Shown in pieces: positions 42,101-62,321 of a DNA stretch of 64,000 bases. The notes beneath the pieces were generated by a model, which was given only the letters and a program-made list of their open reading frames with translations, was not told the origin of the DNA and searched no databases. This stretch comes from Macrostomum hystrix (taxonomy: Eukaryota; Animalia; Platyhelminthes). The stretch's first letter is position 1. The number at the start of each line of letters is the position of its first letter. The position numbers and the translations under genes were made by a program. The DNA lies in NCBI GenBank assembly GCA_950097015.1, contig CATNEN010000011.1, forward strand, positions 868,001 to 932,000, in the 5' to 3' direction.

Positions 42101-44429
42101 TGATTTCAGAATAATTGTTAATGATAAACATGTAATGGATGAAGGACCACTTCCTGAAGTTGCAGCATATTTAATTGTAAGTTTTAATGGCATCATTTTT
42201 CTATATTTTTTTCTTTCCTTAGTTTACTTGGAATTACTTATCTATTAGCACTTTTACATGGAGCTTATACATTGTTGTTGTGTTTTTGAATATTTTTTAG
42301 ATTGTTTTCATGTAGATTCCTTTTTACGAGCCTAACCAAATAGTGCTAATTGCAATAAAAGATACAAAACAAATTTAATGAATATTTTAGGCATTACTTG
42401 GACTTGGATTGTTATTAATTCTGCTAGTAAGATCAGTAAGTCTAATCGACACTTTAGTTTATGTATGTAAATGCTAATTTAACATATAACGAGAATTTAA
42501 TTAGAACATACTAAAGCATAATCTATCCAAACATCAAGCCGTACAAGTGTAATTTAAAACTTCATCATAGTTGGCTGTGATTAACAAGTGTTCTTGGCAT
42601 TGCTCTGGGCAATAAAAATACATATATTTCTGTCTTTAGAATAATTTAGTAAATGGCTACACTAATATTAGCCACTGATTTAATAATTCTTTTGATTGAA
42701 GCTCCCTAGTGCTCCCTAGAAGCTAGTGCATGTTTTCGTGAAATTCTGTCAGGCTCGTTATTATATTTTTTATTAAAACCATTTTACTTCAAGATTGAAC
42801 ATCTGTGCAGCATGTATTTGCTCTTAATAAAGTAACAATTTGTATATTTATGTGTACCTGTGTTCCTACACATAACTTTTTTGCAGTCTAAAATTGTTAC
42901 ATAATATGTTGAAATAGTAAGCTCCAACGCTAATACCATGATTATTTTTGTTGTTTATTTAGCTATTTTGACTTTTATAATTTGGCTCTACGTTTGGCTT
43001 CTAATTAAACTGAAAATGGTAAATTTAGCTAAATACTAGGGTGAAATCTCATCAACCGAACAAGAAAATGTCATTTTCGACCATTCCAAGTTTCATAACA
43101 AAAAAACTAAACAAGATAAGAAAATAAAATTTACGGGTAGTTGTAAAAAACAATTTTATCTTTCAAATGAAAGTCTAGTCATCTAAATCGGTTCACTACA
43201 AAAAAAGTTGTGGCTATTTTTGTTTCAATTCCGAACAATGAATTTCCTATTTCATCAAACCGAACGATGTTTCTGATGTTCGGTTTTTTTTTTATTTGCC
43301 AAAAAAATTGACTTCTGCTCAATAAAAAGTTATAACAAAACAGTGTAAAAGAAAGAAAAAATCATGCTGCATCGATCTAAGTAAAGTTCAATAGTCCGAT
43401 TTGATAATAAGAGGGTTATTTTTAGCATCAAAGTATGTACCTCCCATCCGAGTCAAATCGTGCAATTTTTTTTCCATCTTGAGTTTTCCTGCTTCAGGCA
43501 CACTAAACAGCGAAACAAACAGCGAAAAAGTTATGTGCTGTCTTTGCTCATGAGTTTCCTATGGTTCGTGGAGTTTATAGTATTTTGCAACGAAGCCTTT
43601 AGTGACAAACTCACCCTCATTTCATAATTGTAGGCCTGGCGGTACTTGCGATATCTCAGACCTTAAGTCGCTACAGCTTTATTATGCAAACAGAGATGCT
43701 TGGTAAAACTTAAAAATAAATGAAAACCATGCAAAACTTCAAAGTAAAATCGGTTTCTCCCAGTTTAAAAGCGTTTACGCTGTACTAATGAGAATTAATG
43801 TAACTCACTTGCACAAAAAATGTCCACTTTTTCGAAATCTTTTAAACTTTTTTCTGAACGTGTTTTTCTACTGCTAGACTACTAGTCCTACTGGCAGTAG
43901 TCTGTTGCGGAAATTAAAAAAGCTAAAGCAAATGATCCCAGCTCTTAGGAAAAAAGATTGAAGGTCCAATAAAGGCTAGGCTACACAACTGGGCCTCCTT
44001 GGCAGACAGGGCAGAGAAGGAGACAAAGGCGGGAGAGAGCCGAACAGAGACCATTGCGTGATCTCCATGGCAACCGAGTTGCACATATGACAATTGTTGG
44101 CAACGATGAATGACAGGGCGAGGCCTAGCCAAAGGTATGAAGAAGCAATCTGGACTGGAAGCCGACCCCCTGACTCAACTTGTTGGAGGCCACTTAAATT
44201 TCCCCATCAATACACAGCAGATAGACAAAGTAGCATTAGGCCTATAGGCCTAGCACGTAAAGAAAGGTCATAAATGAAAGCAAGTACTTGGGGCCAAAAT
44301 TCTAGGCTGAAAATTTACTCTGTAACTTGATATTTAACAAAAAAGGATGCAGTCACAATGCAGGGAGATAAAAAGAAGATGAGGAAGAGAGCTGAAAGTA
44401 TATAGCGGCTAGGCGTGAAAGAGGAGAGA

Positions 44430-44760
44430 GAAGAAGGGTAAGAGAGAGAAGGAGAGGGGGAGAGAGAAAAGGAAAGGGGGAGACAGAGAAGGAGAGGGGA
44501 AGACAGAGAAGGAGAGGGGAAGACAGAGAAGGAGAGGGGAAGACAGAGAAGGAGAGGGGAAGACAGAGAAGGAGAGGGGAAGACAGAGAAGGAGAGGGGA
44601 AGACAGAGAAGGAGAGGGGAAGACAGAGAAGGAGAGTGGAAGACATAGAAGGAGATGGGGAGGACAGAGGAGGAGAGGGGAAGACAGAGAAGGAGAGGGG
44701 AAGACAGAGAAGGAGAGGGGAAGAGGAAGAAGGAGAGATAAGAAGAGAGGGAGAGCGGGA
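44430..44760. repeat. 20-bp purine-rich minisatellite GAAGGAGAGGGGAAGACAGA
   Basis: Tandem units visible. Confidence 0.9.
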
Positions 44761-45172
44761 GAGGTGGAGAACAGAGGTAGGGGGCGAGGTAGAGGAAGAA
44801 AGAGTTTGCTCTTGTCACCAATATTCTCAGCCCCAGTCAGCTGCCCCCTCAGCCAAATTGCATGCGGGTTGAAGCTAGCCAATAGCCAATACCGCACATA
44901 AATTCATGAGCCAATCAAAATGCTCGAAAACCGAAACCCCTGCACCGGGGTTCAATTTTGGGGTCATTCCATTACCACTCAGCCAGAGGCTGGGCCATAG
45001 ATTTTAGGCTTACTTAGAAGAGATGGAATTAATGCATAATACAAGAGCACATTTTAGAGACAAACCAGTAAACAGCCAATTATCGCATTTTATATTCTTT
45101 GCTGGGAGCTGCGAATGCAAATGGAATCCCAATCACACAAAAAGACGACACCAAAAGATGGCTAATAGACTA

Positions 45173-47935
45173 ATAGAGAGCCAGAAAGAAGAGGGCGGGA
45201 GTGAGGAAGCTGAGAGCCAGAAAGAAAAGGGCGGGAGTGAGGATCCTGAGAGCCAGGGGGCGGGAGTGAGGATGCTGAGAGCCAGAAAGAAGAGGGCGGG
45301 AGTGAGGATCCTGAGAGCCAGAGGGCGGGAGTGAGGATCCTGAGAGCCAGGGGGCGGGAGTGAGGATGCTGAGAGCCAGAAAGAAGAGGGCGGGAGTGAG
45401 GATCCTGAGAGCCAGAGGGCGGGAGTGAGGAAGCTGAGAGCCAGAAAGAAGAGGGCGGGAATGAGGAAGCTGAGAGCCAGAAAGAAGAGGGCGGGAGTGA
45501 GGAAGCTGAGAGCCAGAAAGAAGAGGGCGGGAGTGAGGAAGCTGAGAGCCAGAAAGAAGAGGGCGGGAGTGAGGAAGCTGAGAGCCAGAAAGAAGAGGGC
45601 AGGAGTGAGGAAGCTGAGAGCCAGAAAGAAGAGGGCGGGAGTGAGGAAGCTGAGAGCCAGAAAGAAGAGGGCGGGAGTGAGGAAGCTGAGAGCCAGAAAG
45701 AAGAGGGCGGGAGTGAGGAAGCTGAGAGCCAGAAAGAAGAGGGCGGGAGTGAGGAAGCTGAGAGCCAGAAAGAAGAGGGCGGGAGTGAGGAAGCTGAGAG
45801 CCAGAAAGAAGAGGGCGGGAGTGAGGAAGCTGAGAGCCAGAAAGAAGAGGGCGGGAGTGAGGATGCTGAGAGCCAGAGGGCGGGAGTGAGGAAGCTGAGA
45901 GCCAGAAAGAAGAGGGCGGGAGTGAGGAAGCTGAGAGCCAGAAAGAAGAGGGCGGAAGTGAGGAAGCTGAGAGCCAGAAAGAAGAGGGCGGGAGTGAGGA
46001 AGCTGAGAGCCAGAAAGAAGAGGGCGGAAGTGAGGAAGCTGAGAGCCAGAAAGAAGAGGGCGGGAGTGAGGAAGCTGAGAGCCAGAAAGAAGAGGGCGAG
46101 AGTGAGGAAGCTGAGAGCCAGAAAGAAGAGGGCGGGAGTGAGGATGCTGAGAGCCAGAGGGCGGGAGTGAGGAAGCTGAGAGCCAGAAAGAAGAGGGCGG
46201 GAGTGAGGAAGCTGAGAGCCAGAAAGAAGAGGGCGGGAGTGAGGAAGCTGAGAGCCAGAAAGAAGAGGGCGGAAGTGAGGAAGCTGAGAGCCAGAAAGAA
46301 GAGGGCGGGAGTGAGGAAGCTGAGAGCCAGAAAGAAGAGGGCGGAAGTGAGGAAGCTGAGAGCCAGAAAGAAGAGGGCGGGAGTGAGGAAGCTGAGAGCC
46401 AGAAAGAAGAGGGCGAGAGTGAGGAAGCTGAGAGCCAGAAAGAAGAGGGCGGGAGTGAGGATGCTGAGAGCCAGAGGGCGGGAGTGAGGAAGCTGAGAGC
46501 CAGAAAGAAGAGGGCGGGAGTGAGGAAGCTGAGAGCCAGAAAGAAGAGGGCGGAAGTGAGGAAGCTGAGAGCCAGAAAGAAGAGGGCGGGAGTGAGGAAG
46601 CTGAGAGCCAGAAAGAAGAGGGCGGAAGTGAGGAAGCTGAGAGCCAGAAAGAAGAGGGTGGAAGTGAGGAAGCTGAGAGCCAGAAAGAAGAGGGCGGGAG
46701 TGAGGAAGCTGAGAGCCAGAAAGCAGAGGTTAGGAGTGAGGAAGCTGAGAGCCAGAAAGAAGAGGGCGGGAGTGAGGAAGCTGAGAGCCAGAAAGAAGAG
46801 GGCGGAAGTGAGGAAGCTGAGAGCCAGAAAGAAGAGGGCGGGAGTGAGGAAGCTGAGAGCCAGAAAGAAGAGGCCGGGAGTGAGGAAGCTGAGAGCCAGA
46901 AAGAAGAGGGCGGAAGTGAGGAAGCTGAGAGCCAGAAAGAAGAGGGCGGGAGTGAGGAAGCTGAGAGCCAGAAAGATGATGGCGGGAGTGAGGAAGCTGA
47001 GAGCCAGAAAGAAGAGGGCGGGAGTGAGGAAGCTGAGAGCCAGAAAGAAGAGGGCGGGAGTGAGGAATCTGAGAGCCAGAAAGATGATGGCGGGAGTGAG
47101 GAAGCTGAGAGCCAGAAAGAAGAGGGCGGGAGTGAGGAAGCTGAGAGCCAGAAAGAAGAGGGCGGAAGTGAGGAAGCTGAGAGCCAGAAAGAAGAGGGCG
47201 GAAGTGAGGAAGCTGAGAGCCAGAAAGTAGAGGTTAGGAGTGAGGAAGCTGAGAGCCAGAAAGAAGAGGGCGGGAGTGAGGAAGCTGAGAGCCAGAAAGA
47301 AGAGGGCGGAAGTGAGGAAGCTGAGAGCCAGAAAGAAGAGGGCGGAAGTGAGGAAGCTGAGAGCCAGAAAGAAGAGGGCGGGAGTGAGGAATCTGAGAGC
47401 CAGAAAGATGATGGCGGGAGTGAGGAAGCTGAGAGCCAGAAAGAAGAGGGCGAGAGTGAGGAAGCTGAGAGCCAGAAAGAAGAGGGCGGGAGTGAGGAAT
47501 CTGAGAGCCAGAAAGATGATGGCGGGAGTGAGGAAGCTGAGAGCCAGAAAGAAGAGGGCGGGAATGAGGAAGCTGAGAGCCAGAAAGAAGAGGGTGGAAG
47601 TGAGGAAGCTGAGAGCCAGAAAGAAGAGGGCGGGAGTGAGGAAGCTGAGAGCCAGAAAGTAGAGGTTAGGAGTGAGGAAGCTGAGAGCCAGAAAGAAGAG
47701 GGCGGGAGTGAGGAAGCTGAGAGCCAGAAAGAAGAGGGCGGAAGTGAGGAAGCTGAGAGCCAGAAAGAAGAGGGCGGAAGTGAGGAAGCTGAGAGCCAGA
47801 AAGTAGAGGTTAGGAGTGAGGAAGCTGAGAGCCATAAAGAAGAGGGCGGGAGTGAGGAAGCTGAGAGCCAGAAAGAAGAGGGCGGAAGTGAGGAAGCTGA
47901 GAGCCAGAAAGAAGAGGGCGGGAGTGAGGAAGCTG
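45173..47935. repeat. 36-bp satellite AGCCAGAAAGAAGAGGGCGGGAGTGAGGAAGCTGAG
   Basis: About 75 units, with 26-bp deletion variants. Confidence 0.97.
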
Positions 47936-48939
47936 CAGGGTGGCAACCATGCACAGCAACGATTTTTTGTTTTTTTATGTTCAAGATGGAAGCTAGGCCT
48001 TTTGACATTGATAGCTTCCAGAAAAAACTCAATTCCTTCTCGTGGTGACTCGGAAGCAAGGACTCATTTGTCTTCTGCTAGGCTAATAATTTGGTATTTG
48101 GTACTGCATTTTTATATAATTGATATGTTTGATTTGATTCCATTGACATTCAGAAATATAAGCCTGTTGCCTGCAGTGTGTGTTGATTTGCTTTCAAATC
48201 AAATCAATTTGTATTGAGTCCGCTTCCTTTCTTGGTTTGGTCGTCAGGGGTTTTTGTTAACCGAGAAGGAGGCCCTTCCCTGCCGCAGCAGCAAGCAAAA
48301 CTTTTTGTATTTAACGAAAAGGTAAATTTTATTATAATCAATATTTTTCTACCTTGACAAAAAATAAAAATCGTTTAAATACGAGTGTACATTCTTTCTA
48401 GCAGATTCTTGTTTATGTATTATTTCTTGATTCAATTTTAAGTTGCTTGCCGCTGAAAACCAAGTTAAAGCCACTAAGTAAAGCACAATTATACACATGA
48501 AAGAGTTCATAAGCAATTTTTTTTGGTTTTTTAGTTTTTTTTTGGTTTTTTAGATTTTTTGTTTTTTTTAGATTTTTTGTTTTTGATGTGCGCTTCTGTA
48601 ATATAAAGGTGCAGATAATAGCAAGGCAATGTTTGACAAGCAGGCAGACAAAATGATTGTCGATACGAGTGCAGCAATGAGCATTTGTTAAGCATTTTGT
48701 GAATAAGGAGGATTATGCAAGCATATTTGAATGAAAGCAAAGTAAAATAAAAATGAGCATTTCGCATTGAGCAGCACAAATGACTATATAGCCTAATGCG
48801 GCAGTTTTATTTGTTAGATTAGAAACCGTAAGCTTGAAAGTGTGATATTTTAGATTAAAATATAGTTATGTTCAAATAGATACAATTAAATAGCGTATCT
48901 ATATGAGATGGCTTAAAAAGAATGATTTCCTCATGCTGC

Positions 48940-50072
48940 TCAGTGCCTAATGCGGCTGCGGGCATTCATGAGTTCATCTCGAGCCCAGATGAACCCACGA
49001 CTCCGACTGCCTTTTGCAAACTGGGGATTCGGCAACACAGCGACTTCACTCACCAGTGCAGGGAACTCATCGCTCTGGTCCGGGAAGACGAACGGCTTCT
49101 GTCCTCCGACCATCCAGCTCGAGATCGACTGGGTGCAAGCAGAGACGATGACTTGGTTCTCACCCAGGAGATGAATAACTCGACTCGGGTAATGCTGCCA
49201 GGTGTTCACACGTCCTCTGCACGTTGTCCGCACGGCGGCCAGCACCCAGCAGTTGAGGCTCAGTTCCGGTAGAGGCAGCGGCAATAGCGGCATGTAATGC
49301 ACCTCCGGGATGTGCGCCAGCTTGATCGGCTGAACACCTTGCATGCACCCATCCGGCAGGACCTCGGTTGGACAAGTGCTTTCGGGCTGGTAGATGTGAA
49401 TCGGCCTGCTAAGAAAATATGCTAATACAACGATTATTGGGTGATCGGCATATGTGCTGGGAAGCCTCATTTTTGTTAAATAAGTTTCAAGCGGCTTATC
49501 AAGAAAATTAACGATACTCTCACCATTGGATGCGAGTACTAGGCCATGCTTCTCCAAGTAGTCGCAGGTGTCTAGCCGAAGCTGGACTCCATCAGCTTCA
49601 GTGCCCTCAGACCGCAGAATCTGCTGAATTGAGTCAAAAAAGCAATTGCCGAATGAATCAGCCTTACCAATTGAGCAATTCAGTGACTTCGCCTTCGCAT
49701 CAAGCATCCGAAGTGCATCGTCGATACTGAGGGCGGCTGGGGTAGAAGCGGCTGCAGGCTGCTGCTCTGCGGGACTCGCGACTCGCATGGGCACTCGCCG
49801 TGGAACCGGAATCGGCTTCCTCTTTTGCAGCCGAGCAGCTTGCCGGGCACTCTTCGCGTTTAGGGCAGCTTGACGCTTCTGCGCTCTGGCTCTGAAAAAG
49901 GCTAGAGTGGAGCGGCTTGTTAAGTTAGGATGTGGTATGTCCTGGTAGACGGATGTTTTTCTTCTTTTAATAGGAATCGCAGGAGCCTGGCCATGCCGCT
50001 TCGTTGGAAACGCGATTTCCTGAGCAGTTTCCTTGGCAGCCGCTGACACGGATGACACCGGGCAGAATGCAC
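48940..50072 (-). CDS. Exon 3 of pogo transposase-OTU fusion: basic linker, OTU-like cysteine protease, unknown C-terminal domain
   Basis: Acceptor TTTTTCCTGCAG|GT is in frame with ORF 48940-50058. OTU motifs FGNCFFDSI, LRLDTCDYL, TYADHPII..LA..L.RPIHIY and EVHY. Confidence 0.82.
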
Positions 50073-50364
50073 CTGCAGGAAAAAAGGAAATGATAAAATA
50101 TATTTAATTGCAAAACGGCCAACAAGGCATTCAAAATTTAATGAATAGATTCTTTCGTCTTTTTTGACTTAAGGTTAGTGCATTAAGCCGTAAGCAAAAA
50201 GGCTCATAAACCCCAAGGCTCAATTAGACCAAATGGCTGAAAAACCCCGATAGATCAATAGAATCAACTGACAGAGTTCATTTGATCGGTGAATGCACTT
50301 CACAACTTAAGAGTGAGTCAAAGGAGTAAATAAATATATATATCATAATTTTATAATTTCTTAC

Positions 50365-51655
50365 CTGGCTGCTCCTCGTCACTTGATTCCGCATTGACCG
50401 CCGGAGCTGTTTCCTGTTCTTCATCCGCTGGCATTGGACTGCTCTCAAACAGGTTGTTGCAGCTGTCTGAGCTCTGCGGGTCAGAGGAGGGGTCGCCTTC
50501 GGAGCTGACGTGCTCGTCATCAGGCTGCTCGCAGCAGAAATTGCCAGTCAGTCGGAACAGCAGCTGCTGCAGTGTGCGATCTGCATCAGTCTGAGCCGGC
50601 TCGGTCTGCAGCCGTTCAAGGTAAGCAGCCCCCAGAACGTCCTCAAAGCAGCGCTCAACAGAGCCGGCGACCGTCTGGCACTTTCTTGAAATCTTGAAAA
50701 TTTTCGCTTCTGGCTGGCTAGATTGGCTCCCGCCAATGCTGCAGGCAACGTCCTGGATCACGGGTGCAGGTGCAGGGTCCTGGCGCTTGCAGAGCTTGTC
50801 GTAGGCCAGAGCATCCGGATTCCGCGGATAGATGCCGCTCTTCCTGAAGCCAGCGCTGATGTTCTTAGGAGTCGCCCGCTCCATCAGGACCTCCCGCAGC
50901 ATGCTGACGAAGCTCAATCTGCTGATCATGCTGCCAAATGCCACTTTCCGAGACCGGTCCGCCAGAAGCTCTCGCCAGCCAGCTTTCACCGAACGAAAGA
51001 CGGCAAGATCAAGCGGCTGAATGACATGCGTGGCATTCGGAACGAGGCCGTAGAGCACGACCTTTTGTTGCCGCAGGTAGTCAAGAACCTCCAGGGAGAA
51101 TCTAGAGTCATGCAGATCTGTGAAAAGGACAACTGGGCGACGGATATTGTGTTGTTCCAAGAATGGAACAAATGTTTCCTTTGCGAAAGCCTCAAATGCA
51201 TTGGCTGTCATCCAACCATTGGGTGAAAATGCATAGTGGCAATCACTAGGATAGTCAATCATTTGCTGTTGCTTTTTTCCTGGAAACAGAAAGCGTGGCG
51301 GTAAAATTGCACCAGCGCATTGCACGGTAATTAAAACGGTCGTGTGCTTGCGATCACTGCCGTGAACCTTCTGCACAACATTCACCATGCCCTTCTCAGC
51401 TAAAACTGAGTGGGATTTCATTGCCTGAGGCACTGCAATTTCGTCACAGTTGAACATGCGGGCCGGGTCCTGCAGAGCTCCATCGAGAAGGCCGTCGCTC
51501 TCGAAGTCCGATAGCTCTGTAAACCAGTTGCGGATCCGCCCTTCGGTGACAAGCGTCCGGGCTGGATTGACAGCCTGGGGTGTCCGGCGAGAAATGTCCG
51601 GGTGCCGCTCCAGGAAGCGATTTATCCAGCCATCGGACAAACCAGACTGCTTGAG
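50365..51655 (-). CDS. Exon 2 of pogo transposase-OTU fusion: DDE_1 catalytic domain, DD35D
   Basis: Acceptor TCTCTTAG|CTC; SDGWINRFLERHP, FNCDE, GWMT, LFTDLH, HVIQPLDLAVF, with 35 residues between the second and third Asp; donor CCAG|GTAAGA, phase 1. Confidence 0.9.
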
Positions 51656-51723
51656 CTAAGAGAGAATAATATTAATGCAGCAAAAAGTTATTAAAAATTT
51701 AAAATGCGTGACATAATTAAATT

Positions 51724-52197
51724 CAGGGATGGAGAGATGAAGGGATGGAGAGATGAAGGGATGGAGAGATGAAGGGATGGAGAGATAAAGGGATGGAGAG
51801 ATGAAGGGATGGAGAGATGAAGGATGGAGAGATGAAGGGATGGGGAGATGAAGGGATGGAGAGATAAAGGGATGGAGAGATGAAGGGATGAAGAGATGAA
51901 GGGATGGAGAGATGAAGGGATGGAGAGATGAAGGGATGGAGAGATGAAGGGATGAAGAGATGAAGGGATGGAGAGATGAAGGGATGGAGAGATGAAGGGA
52001 TGAAGAGATGAAGGGATGGAGAGATAAAGGGATGGAGAGATGAAGGGATGAAGAGATGAAGGGATGGAGAGATGAAGGGATGGAGAGATAAAGGGATGAA
52101 GAGATGAAGGGATGAAGAGATGAAGGGATGGAGAGATGAAGGGATGAAGAGATGAAGGGATGGAGAGATGAAGGGATGGAGAGATGAAGAGATGAGG
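51724..52197. repeat. 16-bp minisatellite GAAGGGATGGAGAGAT in transposase intron 1
   Basis: About 29 units. Confidence 0.95.
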
Positions 52198-52459
52198 AAA
52201 TTTCTTATGCTCATCCTTATACGTTTATAGGGGATATCTCAAAAGTCTGTCTGCATAACTTATTCAAATTTTTATCATAATACGATCTCATACTATAATG
52301 ATGGCCCTCTGATTATATTTCGGTGGGACTGCCATGCACCATACTGGGGCGCCGTGAAAGCGGAACAGTGAAGGTTTCCAGGGCGCCGTCTTTAGGGCGA
52401 GGCCAGATTTAAGTGAAATATATATATTGGGGAAGAAGAGAAACAAGCAACGAAGGAAA

Positions 52460-52840
52460 AAGCGGGTGAAGAGAATCTAGAGAGGAAGCGGTGAAGAGAA
52501 TCTAGAGAGGAAGCGGTGAAGAGAATCTAGAGAGGAAGAAGCGGGTGAAGAGAATCTAGAGAGGAAGCGGTGAAGAGAATCTAGAGAGGAAGCGGTGAAG
52601 AGAATCTAGAGAGGAAGCGGTGAAGAGAATCTAGAGAGGAAGCGGTGAAGAGAATCTAGAGAGGAAGAAGCGGGTGAAGAGAATCTAGAGAGGAAGCGGT
52701 GAAGAGAATCTAGAGAGGAAGCGGTGAAGAGAATCTAGAGAGGAAGAAGCGGTGAAGAGAATCTAGAGAGGAAGCGGTGAAGAGAATCTAGAGAGGAAGA
52801 AGCGGTGAAGAGAATCTAGAGAGGAAGCGGTGAAGAGAAC
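52460..52840. repeat. 25-bp minisatellite GAGAATCTAGAGAGGAAGCGGTGAA in transposase intron 1
   Basis: About 14 units. Confidence 0.95.
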
Positions 52841-52947
52841 CTATAGGGGAAGGGGATGAAGACGCTTCTTTTCAGGAACAAAAAATGAAGATGTGGGTCC
52901 TAAACGCATTCGATAGAAATTTGAAAAATTTTCGGCCTGTTCCCTAC

Positions 52948-53310
52948 CTTGGTTGCAGGTCGCAGGCCGCTGCGGTCCTCGCTCGCTTCGCTCAACTTCA
53001 CGACTGTTTGGGTCGCCTGTTGCTGCAGCTGCTTCCGAGTGATAGGAATTTGCTGCCGGGCAGCTTCCTTTATTGACTCGCTGAGCAGCTGCTCTTCGGC
53101 TTGGGTGAAGTACCGCTTGCATGTGTTCTTATTGCGCGGCCGCTGCCCATTCAGTACCTTGCGGACTCTGTCATAAAGTGTAGTGGTGGGTACAGAATAT
53201 TGATTAGCAGCATCTCGATAATTTATTGATTTGCCACTTCGGATTTGTGCTATCACATAATCAGTTGCTTCCTGGATTCGAACCTTCTTACTCTTCTGTC
53301 CTACGGCCAT
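52948..53310 (-). CDS. Exon 1 of pogo transposase-OTU fusion: psq-type HTH plus start of Tc5/CENP-B HTH
   Basis: YRDAANQYSVPTTTLYDRV and FTQAEEQLL..I.EAARQQIPIT; donor AAG|GTAGGG, phase 0. Confidence 0.85.
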
Positions 53311-53849
53311 TGTCTATGGTAATTATAAGTTATATAAATTGAAATTCTAATAAAATGTAGTTAATTTACTGTCTGGTGAAAATTAAATTGAGTAGGCCTA
53401 AAGCAAAATGAAAGCAACTATATAGGCTAGGCTAGGCTAGGTATAATAAGTAGGCTAGGCTATGGCACTATGTAATTATAAATGTATGTAAGCAAAATGA
53501 TGAGAAATAATGCAAATGCAAGATAAATTAAAAAAGCAAAAGTGTCACGATAGCTGATCAGATGTCTCCGAATGCAGAAGCAGAGTGCGCACAAAGAGCT
53601 TGAGAGTTGTTTGAGTGTAGTTCATCTTAGTATGCTAATCCTTGACTTATATTTTGAGGGGCTTGAAGCAATGAAGCAGCTTGGTGTCCAATGACAACGA
53701 GTCTTGGTCGGGGCAAGCGCATCCAATCACAAGCCGGCCAGGTTAGAAGCTGCGCGGCACCCCAAACTAAATTTGCGTGCACCCATCTCCATTGTTTCTT
53801 TCGCCATCTCCATCTGTCTGCTTGGCTTCTCCCGCTGCCCCGGCCTTAA

Positions 53850-54146
53850 CGCCCTCTGCCCACTCTGCCCACTCTGCCCACTCTGCCTAGGCCTACTCTA
53901 CCCATCCTCTGCCCACTCTACCCACTCTACCCATCCTCTGCCCACTCTGCCCACTCTGCCCACTCTACCCATCCTCTGCCCACTCTGCCCACTCTACCCA
54001 TCCTCTGCCCACTCTGCCCACTCTGCCCACTCTACCCATCCTCTGCCCACTCTGCCCACTCTGCCCACTCTACCCATCCTCTGCCCACTCTGCCCACTCT
54101 GCCCACTCTACCCATCCTCTGCCCACTCTGCCCACTCTACCCATCT
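53850..54146. repeat. 9-bp-based repeat CCACTCTGC/CCACTCTAC/CCATCCTCTGC
   Basis: Tandem mixed units. Confidence 0.9.
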
Positions 54147-56191
54147 TCTGCCCTCTTCCCCGATAGGATAAATTAATTTGCACCCTGTGCAATTTATTTA
54201 TTTATGAAAACTTATGTGCATCTTTTGTGCATTTTTAGACTTGTCAAGTTTCATTATTCATATTACTGAAGTGCAGTCAAGCAGGATTTCTATTATTTAC
54301 AACAGAAACAAAATGGGCCTTTGGAGTCTCAGAGTCAGCGTCAGAAGGCGCGGTGCTTCAGGTGCTGCAGGTGCAAGGCCTCCACCTGTATCCGCGGGGC
54401 GTCGGCGTTATTTGATTAAAAAATTAGAACTGAAAAAATAATCTAATTATTACTTAATTATTTATTACTTAATTTATTACCTAATTATTTATTACTAAAA
54501 ATGTACTAATCAACTATCGAATAATGTTGCCGGAATGAAGATGAAGTGCAGATAGATCTATTTGAGCATGTATGAGATTTTGGCCTACCGCATTAAATAA
54601 TACGAGTCGTATTCGACACTATTTTCGTTACAGATCGATTTCTGGAGGAAAGACTGTGGACGCATCTATACATGTAGTCGCAATGAAGTATAGCGGGCCT
54701 AGTCAAACTGTCGGATTCCCGAATCCTCCATTACAAAGTACGCAATCATATCACTAGGCATATATTCATTTTCACTATGGTTCACTACGTTTGAACCATA
54801 GACAATCCAAGCTTCCACTGTACTCTATAACTCGTATTATCAATAAAGCAAGCGCGGGGCTAGAAGAAAAAATTCTGTTACCATGCACAGCAGCAGCAGC
54901 ATATCTGTTTATTGTCACTGCCTGACACAAACCCTCAACTGTAGATGTACATGTACAAGTGTATTCTATATACACATCTCTATGAACATAAGAATCACAT
55001 CTAAACACATGTATAGTAAATGTCACAGGCCGTAACGCAACCGCTGCAGTGCTGCAATACTGCATGCGGCAGCCTCGCCCGGTCCGAAAATTCTTCATGG
55101 TCTGGTCGCAGGCATGACCGCTATAATTCTGCAGGTACAAAATGAAATAAAATGAAATGTACAAAAAATTGAAAAGAAATTATTTTGTTAAAAAAATTCC
55201 CGTTTAGGCGCACTTAAAAAAGAGAATATATATTTAGGGCCTACTGATTTCCACTTCACAGTTCCGAGAAAATAATTTGAAGCGCTTCTTCGCTTAAAAT
55301 AGATTGGTTGTGCATGTAATATTTCATAGTTTCATTTCCAGCTCGTATTTCCTGTATAGGCCTATACATTTTCGCGTGTACGATGATGTTTTTCGCAGTG
55401 CAGACAGCAATCCGCAACAATTAGGCCTAGGCCTAGTAAGCCTTAGGCTAGCAACAGTTTAACACTTTCCCTTGCATGCACCCTTTTTGCAGGGATGATT
55501 TTTTCTCATAATCCTGCGTCCCCAAGTGTGGAACAATGCATGTGCAGACCTGTCGCCTGTCTATATATATATATGGGATGTGCTAAAATGCAATCGTCCC
55601 TAAAATATTGTCGCAATTGGTATGCGTAGGCCCCATGCGACTCATATATTATGCATATCGGCCGTAGCCTTATTTGTCCCAACATTGCCTGGGGGAAGAA
55701 AAGGCCGATGGTTAAGTGGACAAGGCAAAGTAAAATCGGTTCAGGGTGCGAAAATGGAATCATTTTTATTCCGGCTTTTATTAAAGCCTCAACTTAATAC
55801 ACGCAATATTATACAGTGAATAAGCTCGTGGATGTCATCTCGGGCCTCATAATGTTTCGGCTCTCCGCATAATCTCGCGGTTTCAAATCCTTCGATTGTG
55901 CAACAGCTGTTATCATTGTGACTGTATGACTGAATAGGACTCACGGAAAACCATAATCCACATCCACGACCACGAGTGGAATCACAGCGGGAGGAAAATG
56001 GGAAAAGCAAACAACAAACTGAAAGAATCTGAAGGCTAAACTCTAAAAGTGAAAAAATTCGAACACAAAAAGACTTACTGCTTTATGCATATGTATCGAG
56101 TCAAGGTGTGAAAAGCGGTGGCGTTGCGCAAGAAAATTAGAAGCCATTGCTCTTCGCGACCCTTGGGGAGGCCCTGGCCTGTCTCCCAGGG

Positions 56192-56995
56192 CCTCACGTT
56201 CACTCATGGGGCCCTCCCGTTCACTCATGGGGCCCTTCCGTTCACTCATGTGGCCCTCCCGTTCACTCATGTGGCCCTCCCGTTCACTCATGTGGCCCTC
56301 CCGTTCACTCATGTGGCCCTCCCGTTCACTCATGGGGCCCTCCCGTTCACTCATGTGGCCCTCCCGTTCACTCATGGGGCCCTCCCGTTCACTCATGTGG
56401 CCCTCCCGTTCACTCATGGGGCCCTCCCGTTCACTCATGTGGCCCTCCCGTTCACTCATGGGGCCCTCCCGTTCACTCATGTGGCCCTCCCGTTCACTCA
56501 TGGGGCCCTCCCGTTCACTCATGGGGCCCTCCCGTTCACTCATGGGGCCCTCCCGTTCACTCATGGGGCCCTCCCGTTCACTCATTGCGCCCTCCCGTTC
56601 ACTCATGTGGCCCTCCCGTTCACTCATGTGGCCCTCCCGTTCACTCATGTGGCCCTCCCGTTCACTCATGTGGCCCTCCCGTTCACTCATGGGGCCCTCC
56701 CGTTCACTCATGGGGCCCTCCCGTTCACTCATGGGGCCCTCCCGTTCACTCATGGGGCCCTCCCGTTCACTCATTGCGCCCTCCCGTTCACTCATGTGGC
56801 CCTCCCGTTCACTCATGTGGCCCTCCCGTTCACTCATGTGGCCCTCCCGTTCACTCATGTGGCCCTCCCGTTCACTCATGGGGCCCTCCCGTTCACTCAT
56901 TGCGCCCTCCCGTTCACTCATGTGGCCCTCCCGTTCACTCATTGCGCCCTCCCGTTCACTCTATCACTCACTCAAATGGGGCTCCCCGTTCACTC
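56192..56995. repeat. 21-bp minisatellite CCCTCCCGTTCACTCATG(T/G)GG
   Basis: About 37 units. Confidence 0.95.
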
Positions 56996-57058
56996 ATTCA
57001 TTGATTTGATTCCAGTAGGCCTAGGCTCATCGTTTTTGCAATGCATGTACAACTAAAC

Positions 57059-57955
57059 CAGGGGTCGGCAAACTTATTAGCTAGCGGGCCAAAGAGAGAA
57101 CCTAAAATATCATATTGGGCCGCATTGACTGTAGAAATATGAGACAGGGGAGAGACACGAGGCAGGCGAGAGATGAGACATGGGAGAGACAAGACAATGG
57201 AGAGATAAGAAACGGGAGCGATAAGACATGGAAGAGATGAGACAGGGGAGAGACGAGACAGGGGATAAATAAGACAGGGGATAGATGAAACAAGGGAGAG
57301 ATGAGACAGGGGAGAGATGAGACAGGGGAGAGATAAGAAACGGGAGAGATAAGGAACGGGAGAGATAAGACAGGGAAGAGACGAGACAGGGGAAAAATAA
57401 GACAGGGGATAGATGAAACAGGGGAGAGATGAGACAGGGGAGAGATGAGACAGGGGAGAGACGAGACAGGGGAGAGATGAGACAGGGGAGAGATGAGACA
57501 GGGGAGAGACGAGACAGGGGAGAGATAAGACAGGGGATAGATGAAACAGGGGAGAGATGAGACAGGGGAGAAATAAGACAGGGATAGATGAAACAGGGGA
57601 GAGATGAGACAGGGGAGAAATAAGACAGGGATAGATGAAACAGGGGAGAGATGAGACAGGGGAGAAATAAGACAGGGGATAGATGAAACAGGGGAGAGAT
57701 GAGACAGGCGAGAAATAAGACAGGGATAGATGAAACAGGGGAGAGATGAGACAGGGGAGAAATAAGACAGGGGAGAGATGAGACAGGGGAGAGACGAGAC
57801 AGGGGAGAGATAAGACAGGGGAGAGATAAGACAGGGGAGAGATAAGACAGGGGAGAGATGAGACAGGATACTAGGTGTCGGAAGGGGGCAACGGGCCGGA
57901 TTTGGGAGCTTCGAGGGCCGCATCTGGCCCGCGGGCTGGAGTTTGCCGACCCCTG
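57059..57955. mobile_element. Non-autonomous hAT (Charlie-like) MITE with an internal 16-bp minisatellite
   Basis: Perfect 16-bp TIR CAGGGGTCGGCAAACT / AGTTTGCCGACCCCTG, 8-bp TSD AACTAAAC at 57051-57058 and 57956-57963, subterminal GCGGGCC-type motifs. Confidence 0.95.
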
Positions 57956-58371
57956 AACTAAACTGTATGGATATGGATGAAGGTAGAAAGATAAGGGCCT
58001 AACTGCATGTGTTACATTTAATAAAGAACCAATTAGGTGCACAGGGGGGTTTGTATGACGCCAGAATGAGAAATGACGCATGAGATATATGCGTAAAAAC
58101 CAAGATCCATGCTTGCGTAAAAGCTGAATTAAAAAAATAGTGTATATTTAAGCACTGCAAAACAAAGACAGAATTTAAGTTCTAACCGCAAAAAGCAGAA
58201 CAAAATCTGAAAAACTACTGCCAATTGTCTTGGTACATATCTTTTTAATTGTACCAACTAACAATAACTTTTTAATCTTAAAATCAAAATACTAACACAC
58301 TAAAAGTGTGGGTAAAGATGTGAAAAAGCTGTATATACATGTAAGACTGCGAATGAGGCCATAAATGTAAA

Positions 58372-58735
58372 CGTGAGTGAGGCTGTGAATGTGAGTGAGG
58401 CTGTAAATGTGAGTGAGGCTGTGAATGTGAGTGAGGCTGTAAATGTGAGTGAGGCTGTAAATGTGAGTGAGGCTGTGAATGTGAGTGAGGCTGTAAATGT
58501 GAGTGAGGCTGTGAATGTGAGTGAGGCTGTAAATGTGAGTGAGGCTGTGAATGTAAGTGAGGCTGTGAATGTGAGTGAGGCTGTGAATGTGAGTGAGGCT
58601 GTAAATGTGAGTGAGGCTGTGAATGTGAGTGAGGCTGTAAATGTGAGTGAGGCTGTGAATGTGAGTGAGGCTGTGAATAAAGTTGTGAGTGTGAATGAGG
58701 CTGTGAATAAGGCTGTGAATGAGGCTGTGAATGAT
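58372..58735. repeat. 18-bp minisatellite GTGAGTGAGGCTGT(G/A)AAT
   Basis: About 19 units. Confidence 0.95.
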
Positions 58736-58750
58736 TTCACAGCGCTTAAG

Positions 58751-59087
58751 ATTTGCAGCATGTCTGTGTCATTTTGAATAGCTGTATATCCCTCCCATTG
58801 TGTGTCACTTCTTTGTTATCCACTGCTTACTGTATATTGACAGCAGCGGATCTCACAGTGTTTATCATTTGCAGCATGTCTGTGTCATTTTGAATAGCTG
58901 TATATCCCTCCCATTGTGTGTCACTTCTTTGTTATCCACTGCTTACTGTATATTGACAGCAGCGGATCTCACAGTGTTTATCATTTGCAGCATGTCTGTG
59001 TCATTTTGAATAGCTGTATATCCCTCCCATTGTGTGTCACTTCTTTGTTATCCACTGCTTACTGTATATTGACAGCAGCGGATCTCA
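58751..59087 (+). repeat. 116-bp tandem repeat, about 2.9 copies
   Basis: Identical blocks at 58800, 58916 and 59032. Confidence 0.95.
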
Positions 59088-59719
59088 AGAAGGCGCCGCT
59101 TCAAGACAGTTAGAAACTGCTGAAAAAGCAGGCCGCATGCGTCATCTGTGCAGCTGTGTATACCTGCCCCATCTAGTGTCATTTCTGAGTCTTCTATTAG
59201 ATTCTGTATATAGAAGGCGCCGCTTCAAGACAGTTAGAAACTGCTGAAAAGGCAGGCCGCATGCGTCATCTGTGCAGCTGTGTATACCTGCCCCATCTAG
59301 TGTCATTTCTGAGTCTTCTATTAGATTCTGTATATAGAAGGCGCCGCTTCAAGACAGTTAGAAACTGCTGAAAAAGCAGGCCGCATGCGTCATCTGTGCA
59401 GCTGTGTATACCTGCCCCATCTAGTGTCATTTCTGAGTCTTCTATTTGATTCTGTATATAGAAGGCGCCGCTTCAAGACAGTTAGAAACTGCTGAAAAAG
59501 CAGGCCGCATGCGTCATCTGTGCAGCTGTGTATACCTGCCCCATCTAGTGTCATTTCTGAGTCTTCTATTTGATTCTGTATATAGAAGGCGCCGCTTCAA
59601 GACAGTTAGAAACTGCTGAAAAAGCAGGCCGCATGCGTCATCTGTGCAGCTGTGTATATCTGTCCCATCTAGTGTCATTTCTGAGTCTTCTATTTGATTC
59701 TGTATATAGAAGGCGCCGC
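59088..59719 (+). repeat. 124-bp satellite, 5 copies, forward orientation
   Basis: Unit starts AGAAGGCGCCGCT at 59088, 59212, 59336, 59460, 59584 and (partial) 59708. Confidence 0.97.
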
Positions 59720-60389
59720 TATGATGCTTATGAGGATCGAATTGTTAGTGATAAAGTTTACGATTTGCAATATTTGTTTGGTTGTATGGCGCAATTTTTT
59801 TGGTGACGAAACTATTTTTTCTTTTATTTGATATCCTGGTGCCATGGATACCATGGGTGCCATGGATACCATGGGTCCTATGGAGCCATGATGCACGGTT
59901 GTTTTGTGCGGTGTGAGATTTGCGGTTTTTCTATCTCTCGACAGTTTTTTGAGTTGAGTAATAGATAATATATACTTCGCGGCTTTTTAAAAAGTTGTTC
60001 ACGAAGTACGTTTTATCAATATGGTCGAGTTTGCGCAACTTGAACACTCAAATAGACTCGAGTGTTTAGAGGTGGTGAATGATAGACGGTGACACCTATG
60101 TGAGGAGCATTTTTGTTGCACTAAATTTATGATTGCGCAATTTTAAATCGGAGGCAAAGCAGTGCTTCCAATTCCAATTCCAATTTCCAATTTGAAATTT
60201 GAATGAGACTTGTTATGTTTTTGCAAAGTCTGTCGAAAGCCAAAACCAATGATATGCTATCTATATTTTTATTGGCCGATGACTGACTTCATCCCCACCT
60301 TTGAGCACAGGCATCGTATTTAAGTCATGACTCTAGATACATTTTTAATCATATAATCCTATTTTAAGTATATTTTTCGGTTTCAAAAA

Positions 60390-62146
60390 ATGGAAAAATC
60401 CTTCATTGAAAAACTTCTTCAATGGGAGAAATGGACCTCCAGCAAAGTCCAGCAGCCCGCCACCGTCCAGCAGCCCGCCACCGTCCAGCAGCCCGCCACC
60501 GTCCAGCAGCCCGCCACCGTCCAGCAGCCCGCCACCGTCCAGCAGCCCGCCACCGTCCAACAGCCCGCCACCGTCCAACAGCCCGCCACCGTCCAACAGC
60601 CCGCCACCGTCCAACAGCCTGCCGCCGTTGAGCCGAAGAAGATGCGGGCCGGGCAAGAGTACATCTGCCCTTTCGGCAATTGCTTGCCAATAAAAAAGTC
60701 CCGCTTCAGCGAGCACCTAAAAAGATCCCACGTGACTGTGCTAGAGAGCACAAAGCAGCAGCTAGCAGCAACCGGAATTTCATCTGAAGCTGCGCTTCAA
60801 AAAGAGGCCTTGAAAGCTGTGCGTGCGGCAGTTAAGCTGCACACCCATCAGCTGACTGCCAGCCCGATGCCGGAGATGGCCACATCTGCGGCGAGTGGCG
60901 GAATAATCCGAATCTATTATCCAGCCACTTGCGCAACAGCCATCCTGTCGCTGTCAGAGCGGCAAAACAACAAAAGCTGGCTGACGCCAGGTTAAAAGTG
61001 CCGGCCAGAGCGGTGGTGGCCGAGCATCCTTCAGCCGCTGATGTTGAGGCCCTGTGCGTCTTCCTAGCGAGCTCGCTCGGCGGACGCAGAAAACCGGCTA
61101 CGGTCCGGGAAATCCGGTGCTATCTGAAACGGCTGATGCAGCGCCTCGACATAGTCAGCTTTGAGCAGCTGATCGGCGAGGATCGGCGTGGCGCGGTAAG
61201 CGCCTACTTGGACAGCCTGACATACCTAATGCTGAAGCAGACAGTTTCCGCCCTTGAGAAGGTCGGAAACTTTCTGATTTCGGCGCGCTACCAGCGCATC
61301 TTCGATGGTGGGCTGCAGCAGCAGCTCACCTCGTACCGGCAGGCCACCAAAAATTGGACGGCGAGCTCGAGCTCGTCGGCTGCTGCTAGCGCCGACCTGC
61401 CTGCTGCTGGCGCCGACATGCCTACTGCTGGCGCCCACCTGTCTGCTGCTGGCGCCGACCTGCCTGCTGCTGGCGCCGACATGCCTACTGCTGGCGCCGA
61501 CCTGCCTGCTGCTGGCGCCGACATGCCTACTGCTGGCGCCGACCTGCCTGCTGCTGGCGCCGACATGCCTACTGCTGGCGCCGACCTGCCTGCTACTGGC
61601 GCCGACCTGTCTGCTGCTGGCGCCGACCTGTCTGCTGCTGGCGCCGACCTGTCTGCTGCTGGCGCCGACCTGTCTGCTGCTGGCGCCGACCTGTCTGCTG
61701 CTGGCGCCGACCTGCCTGCTGCTGGCGCTAAAGTCGACTCCGCCAAGCCGCCGGGTAACCGCTTGGCTCGAAAGCGACGTCCAGAGTTCAGCGCCAGCAC
61801 CAGCGCCGCTAGTCCAGCGAGCAAGCGGCCAGAAGTTGAGCGGCAAGAAGTTCAGCCAGGCTGCCTTGTTCTCGGCTACTGGCCAACGGACGGAGAGAAC
61901 TGGTGGCCGGCAATGGTTTGCCTACCCAGCCACGGTTCGAGCTGCACAAAAGGCATTTGCACTCTAAAAATTCATGTGCAATTTTTCGATAAACCGCCGT
62001 CGAGTGCCTGGCTCCACCGGTGGCAGCTTGTAAGCGGAGCAGAGCCGACTCCAAACAATGCCTCCAAAAAGCTCCGCCAAGCCTACGAGCAAATGGCGAA
62101 GGCCAGCAAACTCGAAATTGAGTCTCGCTTAGACAATTTTTTATAA
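60390..62146 (+). CDS. Zinc finger(s) + tyrosine-recombinase core-binding-like helical domain + PWWP domain protein, split by one frameshift at about 60836-60856
   Basis: ORF1 has YICPFGNC..FSEHLKRSH. The second frame is open from 60836 and reads CQPDAGDGHICGEW..LSSHLRNSH, then FLASSLGGRRKPATVREIRCYLKRL, then PWWP (GCLVLGYW..NWWPAMVC..HVQFFDKPPSSAW). Confidence 0.65.
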
Positions 62147-62321
62147 AGAATCAACTGTTTGCTCTTATCTATTATTTGCACGAAACTTTTTAATCTTTAA
62201 CTTTATACTTGTCATTGCTCTTGTAATATACTTGTAATAACTGCGTAAAAATGTATAAAACTTGCACCATAATTCAAAAACACATTTTCGCTGCGCTATT
62301 TCAATGCTAGACAAAATACTG

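What the first reader, a model, noticed from the sequence alone, without database searches (positions are those of the whole stretch)
48940..53310. Spliced pogo/Tigger DD35D transposase fused in frame to an OTU deubiquitinase-like domain
Seen: three ORFs listed separately join through strong GT-AG sites with exactly matching phases (RPATK|LKQSGLSDGW, phase 0; EEQP-G|G-AFCPVSSV, phase 1). The result is one stop-free 928-aa protein: psq HTH, Tc5 HTH, DDE_1 with all three Asp, an acidic then basic (KRRK) linker, OTU, and an unknown ~100-aa tail. Established: OTU domains are known as cargo of Ginger1, Helentron and IS3EU/vertnin-type elements, but I do not recall one on a pogo transposase, where PHD or zinc-knuckle tails are usual. 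Inference: either an active transposon that removes ubiquitin marks from chromatin or from itself, or a domesticated chromatin gene. OTU Cys and His are present (GNC, HY), but the usual DGNC Asp is Phe and the residue after HY is Met, so activity is uncertain.
Basis: partly seen in the sequence, partly recalled or inferred. Interest (0 to 1): 0.8.

Follow-up and report, generated by a model that had tools for sequence, protein, structure and literature searches.

The report
Giant pogo transposon with OTU protease
The three ORFs are one spliced gene for a pogo-type transposase fused to an OTU ubiquitin-protease-like domain and a Tudor-like tail, and it sits inside a real jumping gene about 25 kb long, which I found described in no paper.

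Summary
Three minus-strand exons (53310-52948, 51655-50365, 50072-48940) join into a 928-codon frame with one stop. Read exon by exon, it carries HTH_psq, an HTH_Tnp_Tc5 domain split by intron 1, DDE_1 with a DD35D triad, and OTU.

One contig of a public run from a related organism skips intron 1 exactly and intron 2 less 3 nt.

The "unknown tail" folds with high confidence as a Tudor/Royal-type beta-barrel.

- The gene lies in a TIR-bounded element. A 25-nt terminus flanked by TA starts at window 43039. Its perfect inverted partner lies 4.6 kb beyond the window end, giving about 25.6 kb including a 9.35-kb nested segment.
- The genome holds five such inverted pairs of 12-26 kb, one 285-bp MITE, and solo ends.
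- The MITE's reconstructed empty site, with a single TA, occurs 22 times elsewhere. TA is therefore a true target-site duplication.

A second, diverged subfamily also has an intact gene, matching ends and the same introns.

Two other pogo+OTU proteins exist in unannotated public data. I found none among annotated relatives and none in the literature searched.

OTU keeps its Cys and His but lacks the usual Asp, and its activity is untested.

This scan had already noted the same fusion on another piece of this genome (s1-392118).

The parts
43037..43038 (.). TA target-site duplication at the element's left end, which is 3' of the gene
   Evidence: TA abuts 10 of 12 termini examined. The MITE's empty site with a single TA occurs 22 times in the genome, against 0 for the control.
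43039..43063 (+). Left terminal inverted repeat, 25 nt, starting GGGTGAAATC. A TCATCAACCGAACA motif lies inside it.
   Evidence: The perfect inverted partner is at C11:936598-936619, window-equivalent about 68598-68621 and outside the window. The pattern occurs 15 times forward and 8 times reverse in the genome, against 0 and 1 for the control.
43039..64000 (-). The in-window part of the TIR-bounded pogo-type element. The whole element is C11:911039-936621, about 25.6 kb.
   Evidence: The element is colinear with the C1:2.42 Mb copy over 43039-47938 and 52140-58048. It is colinear again over the last 1.23 kb before the right TIR, at 97% identity.
45176..47935 (.). 36-nt satellite array (78 copies) internal to the element
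   Evidence: Tandem Repeats Finder. The array is shared by the C2 and C1:2.42 Mb copies.
47958..48375 (.). Unrelated MITE-like repeat nested between the satellite and the gene
   Evidence: 17-nt inverted arms. Its pieces recur at many loci.
48940..50072 (-). Exon 3: basic linker, OTU domain, Tudor-like tail, and the stop codon TGA at 48942-48940
48943..49266 (-). Tudor/Royal-type beta-barrel tail (residues 821-928)
   Evidence: AF2 model with pLDDT 88.6 and pTM 0.81. The best structural matches are the PHF19 Tudor domain (Z 6.9, rmsd 1.8 over 55 residues), then TDRD3, MTF2, 53BP1, SGF29 and SAWADEE.
49276..49728 (-). OTU domain. The Cys695 codon is 49644-49642 and the His810 codon is 49299-49297.
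   Evidence: Pfam OTU 1.3e-8. OTUD5 matches at 4e-9 by sequence. OTUD3 matches by fold with TM 0.76. Cys and His are invariant in all paralogs.
50073..50364 (-). Intron 2 (phase 1, GT..AG). The run X5 contig skips 50076-50364.
   Evidence: Position and phase are kept in the C39 and C1:19.44 Mb paralogs.
50365..51655 (-). Exon 2: end of HTH_Tnp_Tc5, DDE_1 core, a Cys-rich patch and an acidic linker. The Asp codons are 51445-51443, 51118-51116 and 51010-51008.
51656..52947 (-). Intron 1 (phase 0, GT..AG), holding two tandem arrays
   Evidence: The run X5 contig skips it exactly.
52948..53310 (-). Exon 1: ATG, HTH_psq and the first half of HTH_Tnp_Tc5
58049..64000 (.). The in-window part of a 9.35-kb nested foldback-like segment that interrupts this copy. 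It is not part of the family's common structure.
   Evidence: Homology with the C1:2.42 Mb copy stops at 58048 and resumes at window-equivalent 67394. Positions 57164-59720 are repeated in inverted orientation at L066:770-3387.

Best explanation
This is the transposase gene of an autonomous cut-and-paste DNA transposon of the pogo superfamily.

Shown:
- The gene has three exons and encodes 928 residues: two N-terminal helix-turn-helix DNA-binding domains, a DD35D catalytic core, an acidic then basic linker, an OTU cysteine-protease domain and a Tudor-like barrel.
- The element ends in 25-nt inverted repeats and duplicates a TA on insertion.
- The family has moved to unrelated sites and has spawned gene-less copies and a MITE.
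- All four protein modules have been kept by purifying selection across subfamilies whose synonymous sites are saturated.

Inferred:
- The HTH domains bind the repeated TCATCAA(A)CCGAACA motifs in the ends, and the DDD core cuts and pastes at TA.
- The basic stretch (KRRK) imports the protein into the nucleus.
- The OTU and Tudor-like pair act in cis on ubiquitin or a ubiquitin-like modifier. The barrel would dock on a methylated partner. The protease would protect the transposase or locally alter chromatin or repair signalling.
- Because the usual Asp is missing, the OTU may work as a Cys-His dyad or only as a binding module.
For: Gene model and domains.

Splicing:
- A contig of run X5 skips both introns.
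- A relative's contig, L031, carries all three exon homologues contiguously.
- Intron positions and phases are conserved in the C39 and C1:19.44 Mb paralogs.

Transposon status:
- The terminal motif occurs in inverted pairs on C11 (25.6 kb), C39 (15.9 kb), C1:2.42 Mb (13.3 kb), C1:5.18 Mb (15.4 kb), C3 (12.3 kb) and C33 (a 285-bp MITE).
- The flanks outside TA all differ.
- The MITE's empty site with one TA occurs 22 times, against 0 for the control.
- The same terminus lies downstream of the gene in three subfamilies.

Decay of copies: C2 is 5'-truncated and frameshifted, C1:14.14 Mb is truncated, C1:2.42 Mb has lost 47939-52139, and C1:19.44 Mb has an in-frame TAG.

Selection: across subfamilies pS is 0.72-0.83 against pN 0.22-0.39 in the HTH, DDE, OTU and tail modules. 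dN/dS is about 0.5 between the intact copy and broken copies, and 1.24 between two broken copies.

Folds.
Against: - No transposition event is dated. Copies are about 89-94% alike outside exons, so current activity is unproven.
- Run X5 is only guessed to be DNA or RNA. Its intron-less contig could be a processed copy rather than mRNA.
- The OTU lacks the Asp of the D-G-x-C motif, and the residue two after the His is Met.
- The Tudor-like match is middling (Z under 8), and I did not examine whether it has an aromatic cage.
- The right TIR of this copy lies outside the window.
- This copy carries a 9.35-kb nested segment, which may impair mobility.
Confidence: 0.8

Rival explanations
1. The C11 (window) gene is a domesticated host gene. 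It would be derived from a transposon but now kept for a chromatin or centromere function, and no longer mobile.
For: - The frame is intact under purifying selection.
- The introns are long and conserved.
- A near-identical, apparently spliced copy exists in another organism's run.
- The element is bloated by satellites and a 9.35-kb nested segment.
- Pogo transposases have been domesticated many times (PMC7386202, PMC4231638).
Against: - The 27 terminal nt (TA plus the 25-nt TIR) match perfectly at both ends, with TA flanks.
- Several copies are broken or gene-less, and there is a MITE.
- A second intact subfamily has its own matching ends.
- The DDD triad and the DNA-binding domains are intact.
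Confidence: 0.12
2. The OTU domain is a catalytically dead pseudo-protease. It would be kept only as a ubiquitin-binding or scaffolding module of the transposase.
For: The Asp of the D-G-x-C motif is Phe, Leu or Tyr in every member of this genome's family, while the distant fusion P0036 keeps D-G-D-C. The residue two after the His is Met or Leu.
Against: Cys and His are invariant in subfamilies that are only 39-43% identical, and the segments around them are the best-conserved blocks. An invariant Glu two residues before the His, and an invariant Asp-His pair, could take the Asp's role. That last point is inference.
Confidence: 0.3
3. The join is an artefact: the OTU and tail exon belongs to a separate gene that merely lies downstream of the transposase.
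For: Exon 2 can be read through to a stop at 50351, only 4 codons past the donor site.
Against: - The same order, phases and in-frame continuity are found in at least four diverged lineages.
- A single 644-residue ORF spans DDE_1 and OTU in P0001.
- The X5 contig joins exons 2 and 3.
- P0036 is one ORF carrying psq, Tc5, DDE_1 and OTU.
Confidence: 0.03

Closest known systems
pogo superfamily transposons, especially the Passer, Tigger and Fot-like families (Gao et al. 2020, PMC7386202)
   Same: The transposase has psq/CENP-B-type HTH domains, HTH_Tnp_Tc5 and DDE_1. The spacing is DD35D, which that paper gives as typical of Passer and Fot. The element has short TIRs and a TA target-site duplication.
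   Different: That paper reports elements of 1.2-5.2 kb and no protease or reader domain on the transposon-encoded transposases. This family is 12-26 kb, carries internal satellites, has two introns, and encodes a transposase of 928-1121 residues with OTU and a Tudor-like tail. The paper's 2-kb flank test for TIRs would class this family as domesticated.
Ginger1 DNA transposons (Bao et al. 2010, PMC2836005)
   Same: A DDE-type transposase carries a C-terminal OTU (or Ulp1) protease domain. Copies are few and contain introns, and they occur in marine invertebrates.
   Different: The Ginger1 catalytic core is a Gypsy-integrase type, not pogo DDE_1. Its TIRs and TSDs differ, and no Tudor-like tail is reported.
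Helitron and Helentron elements with OTU or VTD deubiquitinase domains (PMC4224331, PMC9741609)
   Same: A transposon protein carries a deubiquitinase-type domain. Transposon VTD domains were shown to be active. Transposon OTU domains have never been assayed (PMC9741609).
   Different: These are rolling-circle RepHel elements without TIRs or a TA duplication.
Chimeric domesticated pogo genes (CENP-B, POGK, POGZ)
   Same: A pogo transposase is fused to extra functional domains, and some of these proteins act on chromatin.
   Different: Those genes have lost their TIRs and TSDs and are single-copy host genes. Here the TIRs, the TA duplication, a MITE and decayed copies are all present.
OTUD5/DUBA and OTUD3 (PDB 3pfy, 3tmp, 4bou)
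   Same: These are the best sequence and fold matches of the OTU domain. Cys and His align.
   Different: The Asp three residues before the Cys is replaced by Phe. Identity is only about 20%.

Membership tests
pogo superfamily (IS630-Tc1-mariner group) transposon | DDE_1-type catalytic core with a complete DDD triad | tested here: met
   DDE_1 hits at 8.5e-11. The triad is D192, D301, D337 with spacing 35.
pogo superfamily (IS630-Tc1-mariner group) transposon | N-terminal paired HTH DNA-binding domains (psq/CENP-B type plus HTH_Tnp_Tc5) | tested here: met
   HTH_psq hits at 8e-5, above the Pfam cut-off. HTH_Tnp_Tc5 is split across exons 1 and 2, and each half is below the cut-off on its own.
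pogo superfamily (IS630-Tc1-mariner group) transposon | Terminal inverted repeats | tested here: met
   The 25-nt ends match perfectly in the C11 pair. There are six inverted pairs genome-wide, and the control pattern is almost absent.
pogo superfamily (IS630-Tc1-mariner group) transposon | TA target-site duplication | tested here: met
   TA flanks 10 of 12 ends. The paralogous empty site of the C33 MITE, with a single TA, is found 22 times.
pogo superfamily (IS630-Tc1-mariner group) transposon | Placement inside a named pogo family by phylogeny | tested here: inconclusive
   I made only a quick tree of the nearest hits, with no named reference families in it. The nearest named relatives are arthropod "Tigger-derived-like" and "CENPB-type" proteins at 35-38% identity.
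OTU deubiquitinases | OTU fold and sequence family | tested here: met
   Pfam OTU hits at 1.3e-8. OTUD5 matches at 4e-9. OTUD3 matches by fold with TM 0.76.
OTU deubiquitinases | Catalytic Cys and His | tested here: met
   Both are invariant in all aligned paralogs and in P0001.
OTU deubiquitinases | Third, acidic catalytic residue (the Asp of D-G-x-C in OTUD-type enzymes) | tested here: not met
   The position aligned to the OTUD5 Asp is Phe, Leu or Tyr. The distant fusion P0036 keeps the Asp.
OTU deubiquitinases | Isopeptidase activity on ubiquitin or a ubiquitin-like modifier | not testable with these tools
   This needs an enzyme assay.
Tudor/Royal-family reader domains | Five-stranded SH3-like barrel | tested here: met
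   The model has pLDDT 88.6. The top structural matches are consistently Tudor, chromo-barrel, PWWP and SAWADEE domains, with Z 5-6.9. That Z range is only middling.
Tudor/Royal-family reader domains | Aromatic cage that binds methyl-lysine or methyl-arginine | not tested
   Conserved aromatic residues exist (Y26, W51, F59, F61, F68 and W94 of the tail). I could not inspect their geometry.
Tudor/Royal-family reader domains | Sequence-family (Pfam) match | tested here: not met
   No Pfam family hit the tail.
Domesticated pogo-derived host genes | Loss of TIRs and TSDs, and a single fixed locus | tested here: not met
   TIRs and the TA duplication are present, and several copies are dispersed, decayed or gene-less.

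The most novel reading that the evidence does not exclude
The OTU and Tudor-like pair is a built-in counter-silencing or targeting device. The barrel would dock the transposase on methylated histone tails or on methyl-arginine proteins of the silencing machinery. The protease would strip ubiquitin or a ubiquitin-like mark there, letting a cut-and-paste element operate in, or escape from, repressed chromatin. It would be an active enzyme despite a non-canonical catalytic centre.
Probability: 0.18. Interest if true: 0.85.

Novelty: new variant of a known kind. Interest (0 to 1): 0.6.

Why it matters
Deubiquitinase-type domains recur on unrelated transposons such as Ginger1, Helitrons and Mutator-like elements. 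This suggests that mobile DNA repeatedly needs to act on ubiquitin signalling. According to PMC9741609, no transposon OTU has ever been assayed.

This family adds the pogo superfamily to that list. It offers a compact, intact test case in which the DNA-binding, catalytic, protease and reader modules sit in one protein with defined ends.

It also shows that pogo elements can be five times larger than the reported range and can carry satellite arrays around the genome. The usual screen, which looks for TIRs within 2 kb of the gene, would mislabel such elements as domesticated genes.

Tried and rejected
- Inverted-repeat scans near the gene found nothing convincing. I scanned 6.5 kb and 20 kb around the window gene and 10 kb around three paralogs. 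This first made the family look domesticated, or spread by segmental duplication.
- I briefly considered a Helitron reading of the left boundary (a CTAG end with a small hairpin). I dropped it once inverted partners and TA duplications appeared.
- A candidate 17-nt repeat around the L014 paralog has no TA flanks and is probably chance.
- The two JGI contigs that carry P0115 are the same locus at 99.97% identity, so they gave no independent ends.
- Profile comparison of the tail with the C-termini of P0036, P0115, P0165 and P0162 found nothing.
- The feature search of the protein atlas gave no usable hit.
- The reconstructed empty site for the C11 insertion has no match in the genome, as expected for unique flanks.
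- I could not identify the host organism. Run and organism names are coded, and a findings search by words returned nothing.
- The joined 928-residue model was never sent to a search or fold tool. All searches were exon by exon, by reference. The join was used only in a local script to count the frame and to classify substitutions.
Full report
**The gene.**
The minus strand between 53310 and 48940 carries three ORFs. Read directly, the sequence gives the following model:
- Exon 1 is 53310..52948 and ends AAG|GTAGGG.
- Intron 1 is 1292 nt (52947..51656) and ends TTAG. It holds a 25-nt and a 16-nt tandem array.
- Exon 2 is 51655..50365 and ends CCAG|GTAAGA.
- Intron 2 is 292 nt (50364..50073) and ends TGCAG.
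- Exon 3 is 50072..48940.

A local script that only counted frame and stops gives 2787 nt, 928 codons and the terminal TGA. The joined protein was never sent to a search or fold tool.

**Domains.**
Pfam results:
- Exon 1: HTH_psq and positions 3-34 of HTH_Tnp_Tc5.
- Exon 2: positions 48-65 of the same HTH_Tnp_Tc5 profile, and DDE_1.
- Exon 3: OTU.

A domain split neatly by intron 1 is itself evidence for the splice. The catalytic residues are D192, D301 and D337, with 35 residues between the last two.

**Evidence for splicing.**
I laid four public runs on 48700-53500.
- One 2328-nt contig of run X5 comes from a differently labelled organism and is about 98% identical. It lies on 49953-50075, 50365-51655 and 52948-53500 and beyond.
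- It therefore skips intron 1 exactly. It skips 289 nt of intron 2, three fewer than predicted, which stays in frame.
- The run's kind is only guessed. The contig is either mRNA or a processed copy, and either way splicing at these sites has happened.
- Runs of the window's own organism label give short unspliced pieces across the borders.
- The listed X5 differences are 19 synonymous and 17 non-synonymous. Many agree with this genome's C2 copy.

The only close relative in 5.8 billion proteins is P0001. It is a single ORF spanning DDE_1 and OTU. Its 3.2-kb contig carries all three exon homologues without introns.

**Copies and paralogs.**
The 220-Mb genome holds near copies and diverged paralogs.
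- Near copies: C2 (97%) is cut off inside exon 1 and frameshifted at its end. C1:14.14 Mb is cut off inside exon 2. C1:2.42 Mb has an exon 1 remnant and has lost 47939-52139.
- Diverged paralogs lie on C39, C1:19.44 Mb and C1:13.46 Mb (39-62% protein identity). All keep the same order of transposase, OTU and tail.
- I rebuilt two of the paralogs. C39 is intact at 1121 codons, with an in-frame Pro/Ser-rich expansion in the linker. C1:19.44 Mb has one in-frame TAG.
- Both rebuilt paralogs keep the two introns at the same positions and phases.

Selection:
- Between these subfamilies synonymous sites are saturated (pS 0.72-0.83). Non-synonymous differences are 0.22-0.39 in the HTH, DDE, OTU and tail modules. 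All four modules have therefore been under long-term purifying selection.
- Among the near copies, dN/dS is about 0.5 when the intact copy is involved and 1.24 between two broken copies.

**Transposon or domesticated gene.**
Local scans found no inverted repeats. The near copies also share more than 10 kb of flanking DNA, including a 36-nt satellite. At first this looked like segmental duplication.

The turning point was the left boundary. Homology with C2 and C1:2.42 Mb starts at the same base, about 43037, and so do two further copies. The first 25-30 nt recur in the same relative position downstream of the gene in the C39 and C1:19.44 Mb paralogs. They also recur in inverted orientation at the far end of the C1:2.42 Mb copy.

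A genome-wide pattern search then gave 15 forward and 8 reverse matches, against 0 and 1 for the control. They fall in properly inverted pairs:

| Locus | Span | Content |
|---|---|---|
| C11:911041 / 936619 | 25.6 kb | this copy, intact gene |
| C39:17758854 / 17774742 | 15.9 kb | intact diverged paralog; its own variant of the motif at both ends |
| C1:2418172 / 2431493 | 13.3 kb | gene mostly deleted |
| C1:5177802 / 5193218 | 15.4 kb | no gene found |
| C3:240314 / 252596 | 12.3 kb | no gene found |
| C33:4460904 / 4461188 | 285 bp | MITE |

There are also solo ends.

I fetched the ends.
- The C11 pair matches perfectly for the 27 terminal nt, that is TA plus the 25-nt TIR.
- TA abuts 10 of 12 ends.
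- The DNA outside TA differs at every locus, so these are independent insertions.
- The 5' end carries a second copy of the TCATCAA(A)CCGAACA motif.

The MITE sits inside another repeat family. Its reconstructed empty site, with one TA, occurs 22 times in the genome (2 exact), and the control occurs 0 times. This proves that TA is duplicated on insertion and fixes the termini.

The right end of this copy lies 4.6 kb beyond the window. The last 1.23 kb before it is 97% identical to the C1:2.42 Mb copy. This copy therefore carries a 9.35-kb nested foldback-like segment between 58049 and window-equivalent 67393.

**The extra domains.**
- OTU: a profile of exon 3 finds OTUD5 (4e-9) and OTUD3 among solved structures. 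The model superposes on OTUD3 with TM 0.76.
- Cys695 and His810 are invariant in all paralogs, but the Asp three residues before the Cys is Phe, Leu or Tyr.
- Tail: the last 108 residues model with pLDDT 88.6. An exhaustive structural comparison puts Tudor and related Royal-family barrels on top: PHF19 (Z 6.9, rmsd 1.8 over 55 residues), then TDRD3, MTF2, 53BP1, SGF29 and SAWADEE. Z is middling, but the list is consistent.
- The ESM Atlas shape search finds the same barrel in arthropod clusters of pogo-type transposases that lack OTU (TM 0.62-0.67). This is a lead suggesting that the barrel is the older C-terminal module and that OTU was inserted before it.

**How widespread, and is it known.**
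- An exhaustive profile search of 1.84 billion representatives found only P0001 as close kin.
- Among weaker OTU matches, two are pogo fusions. P0036 (838 residues, a Logan contig) has psq, Tc5, DDE_1 and OTU with a canonical D-G-D-C. P0115 (831 residues, JGI metagenomes) has DDE_1 and OTU.
- Their transposase cores are 33-34% identical to this one.
- In a quick tree of the cores, the six OTU-bearing proteins fall on one side of a branch with weak support (SH-aLRT 84).
- Among 49 relatives of P0036 of comparable length, many from annotated arthropod genomes, none but P0036 itself carries OTU.
- Four full-text searches found no paper linking pogo and OTU.
- Known precedents are Ginger1 and Helitrons (PMC2836005). 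PMC9741609 states that transposon OTU domains have never been assayed.
- Gao et al. give 1.2-5.2 kb and 300-977 residues for pogo elements, and they class genes without TIRs in 2-kb flanks as domesticated (PMC7386202).

**Earlier notes of this scan.**
Another agent had already reported the same fusion, with a "Tudor-like tail", on another piece of this genome (s1-392118). I tested both points independently on this copy.

**Limits.**
- The organism is not identified.
- Current activity, OTU catalysis and the tail's ligand are untested.

Noticed in passing
window 58049-64000, continuing to L066:1-3393: This copy is interrupted by a 9.35-kb foldback-like segment. Positions 57164-59720 recur in inverted orientation at L066:770-3387 (86%). 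The arms enclose satellite arrays and a 405-codon ORF (60929-62146, + strand) with a PWWP domain (Pfam 4.5e-6). This is the unit of note s1-337251.
   Followed up: partly
window 45176-47935 (also 44427-44760, 53853-54153, 56192-56961, 57139-57867): Long satellite arrays are internal parts of the transposon. They are shared by its copies on C2 and C1, so the element spreads satellites through the genome.
   Followed up: partly
window 47958-48375: An unrelated MITE-like repeat with 17-nt inverted arms is nested in the element. It is shared by the C11 and C2 copies, and its pieces occur at dozens of loci.
   Followed up: partly
window about 50520-50700 (exon 2, residues about 320-380 of exon 2): A Cys-rich patch between the DDE core and the acidic linker is conserved in the intact paralogs. 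It reads C-Q-T-V-x-G-S-V-E-x-C, then C-x4-5-C-x-E-H, and may be a small metal-binding module. It is partly visible in P0036.
   Followed up: no
window about 49915-49965 (exon 3 residues 40-56): The motif S-V-Y-Q-D/E-I-P-H/N-x-N-L-T-S-R/K-S-T-L, just after the KRRK stretch, is nearly invariant in all paralogs and in P0001. Its function is unknown.
   Followed up: no
L029:5486-7336 (C39 paralog, exon 2): An in-frame Pro/Ser-rich tandem repeat of about 220 residues expands the linker of the intact C39 transposase to give 1121 residues.
   Followed up: no
genome hits (C5:4557661, C33:470158, C34:5357855, C39:6782872, C7:3254076, C38:28896139): Further variants of the terminal motif point to additional subfamilies or solo ends that I did not examine.
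   Followed up: no
one search hit list (P0004, P0038, P0029): OTU domains of the same sequence neighbourhood are also fused to protein kinases and to an rve integrase (Ginger-like) in public data.
   Followed up: no
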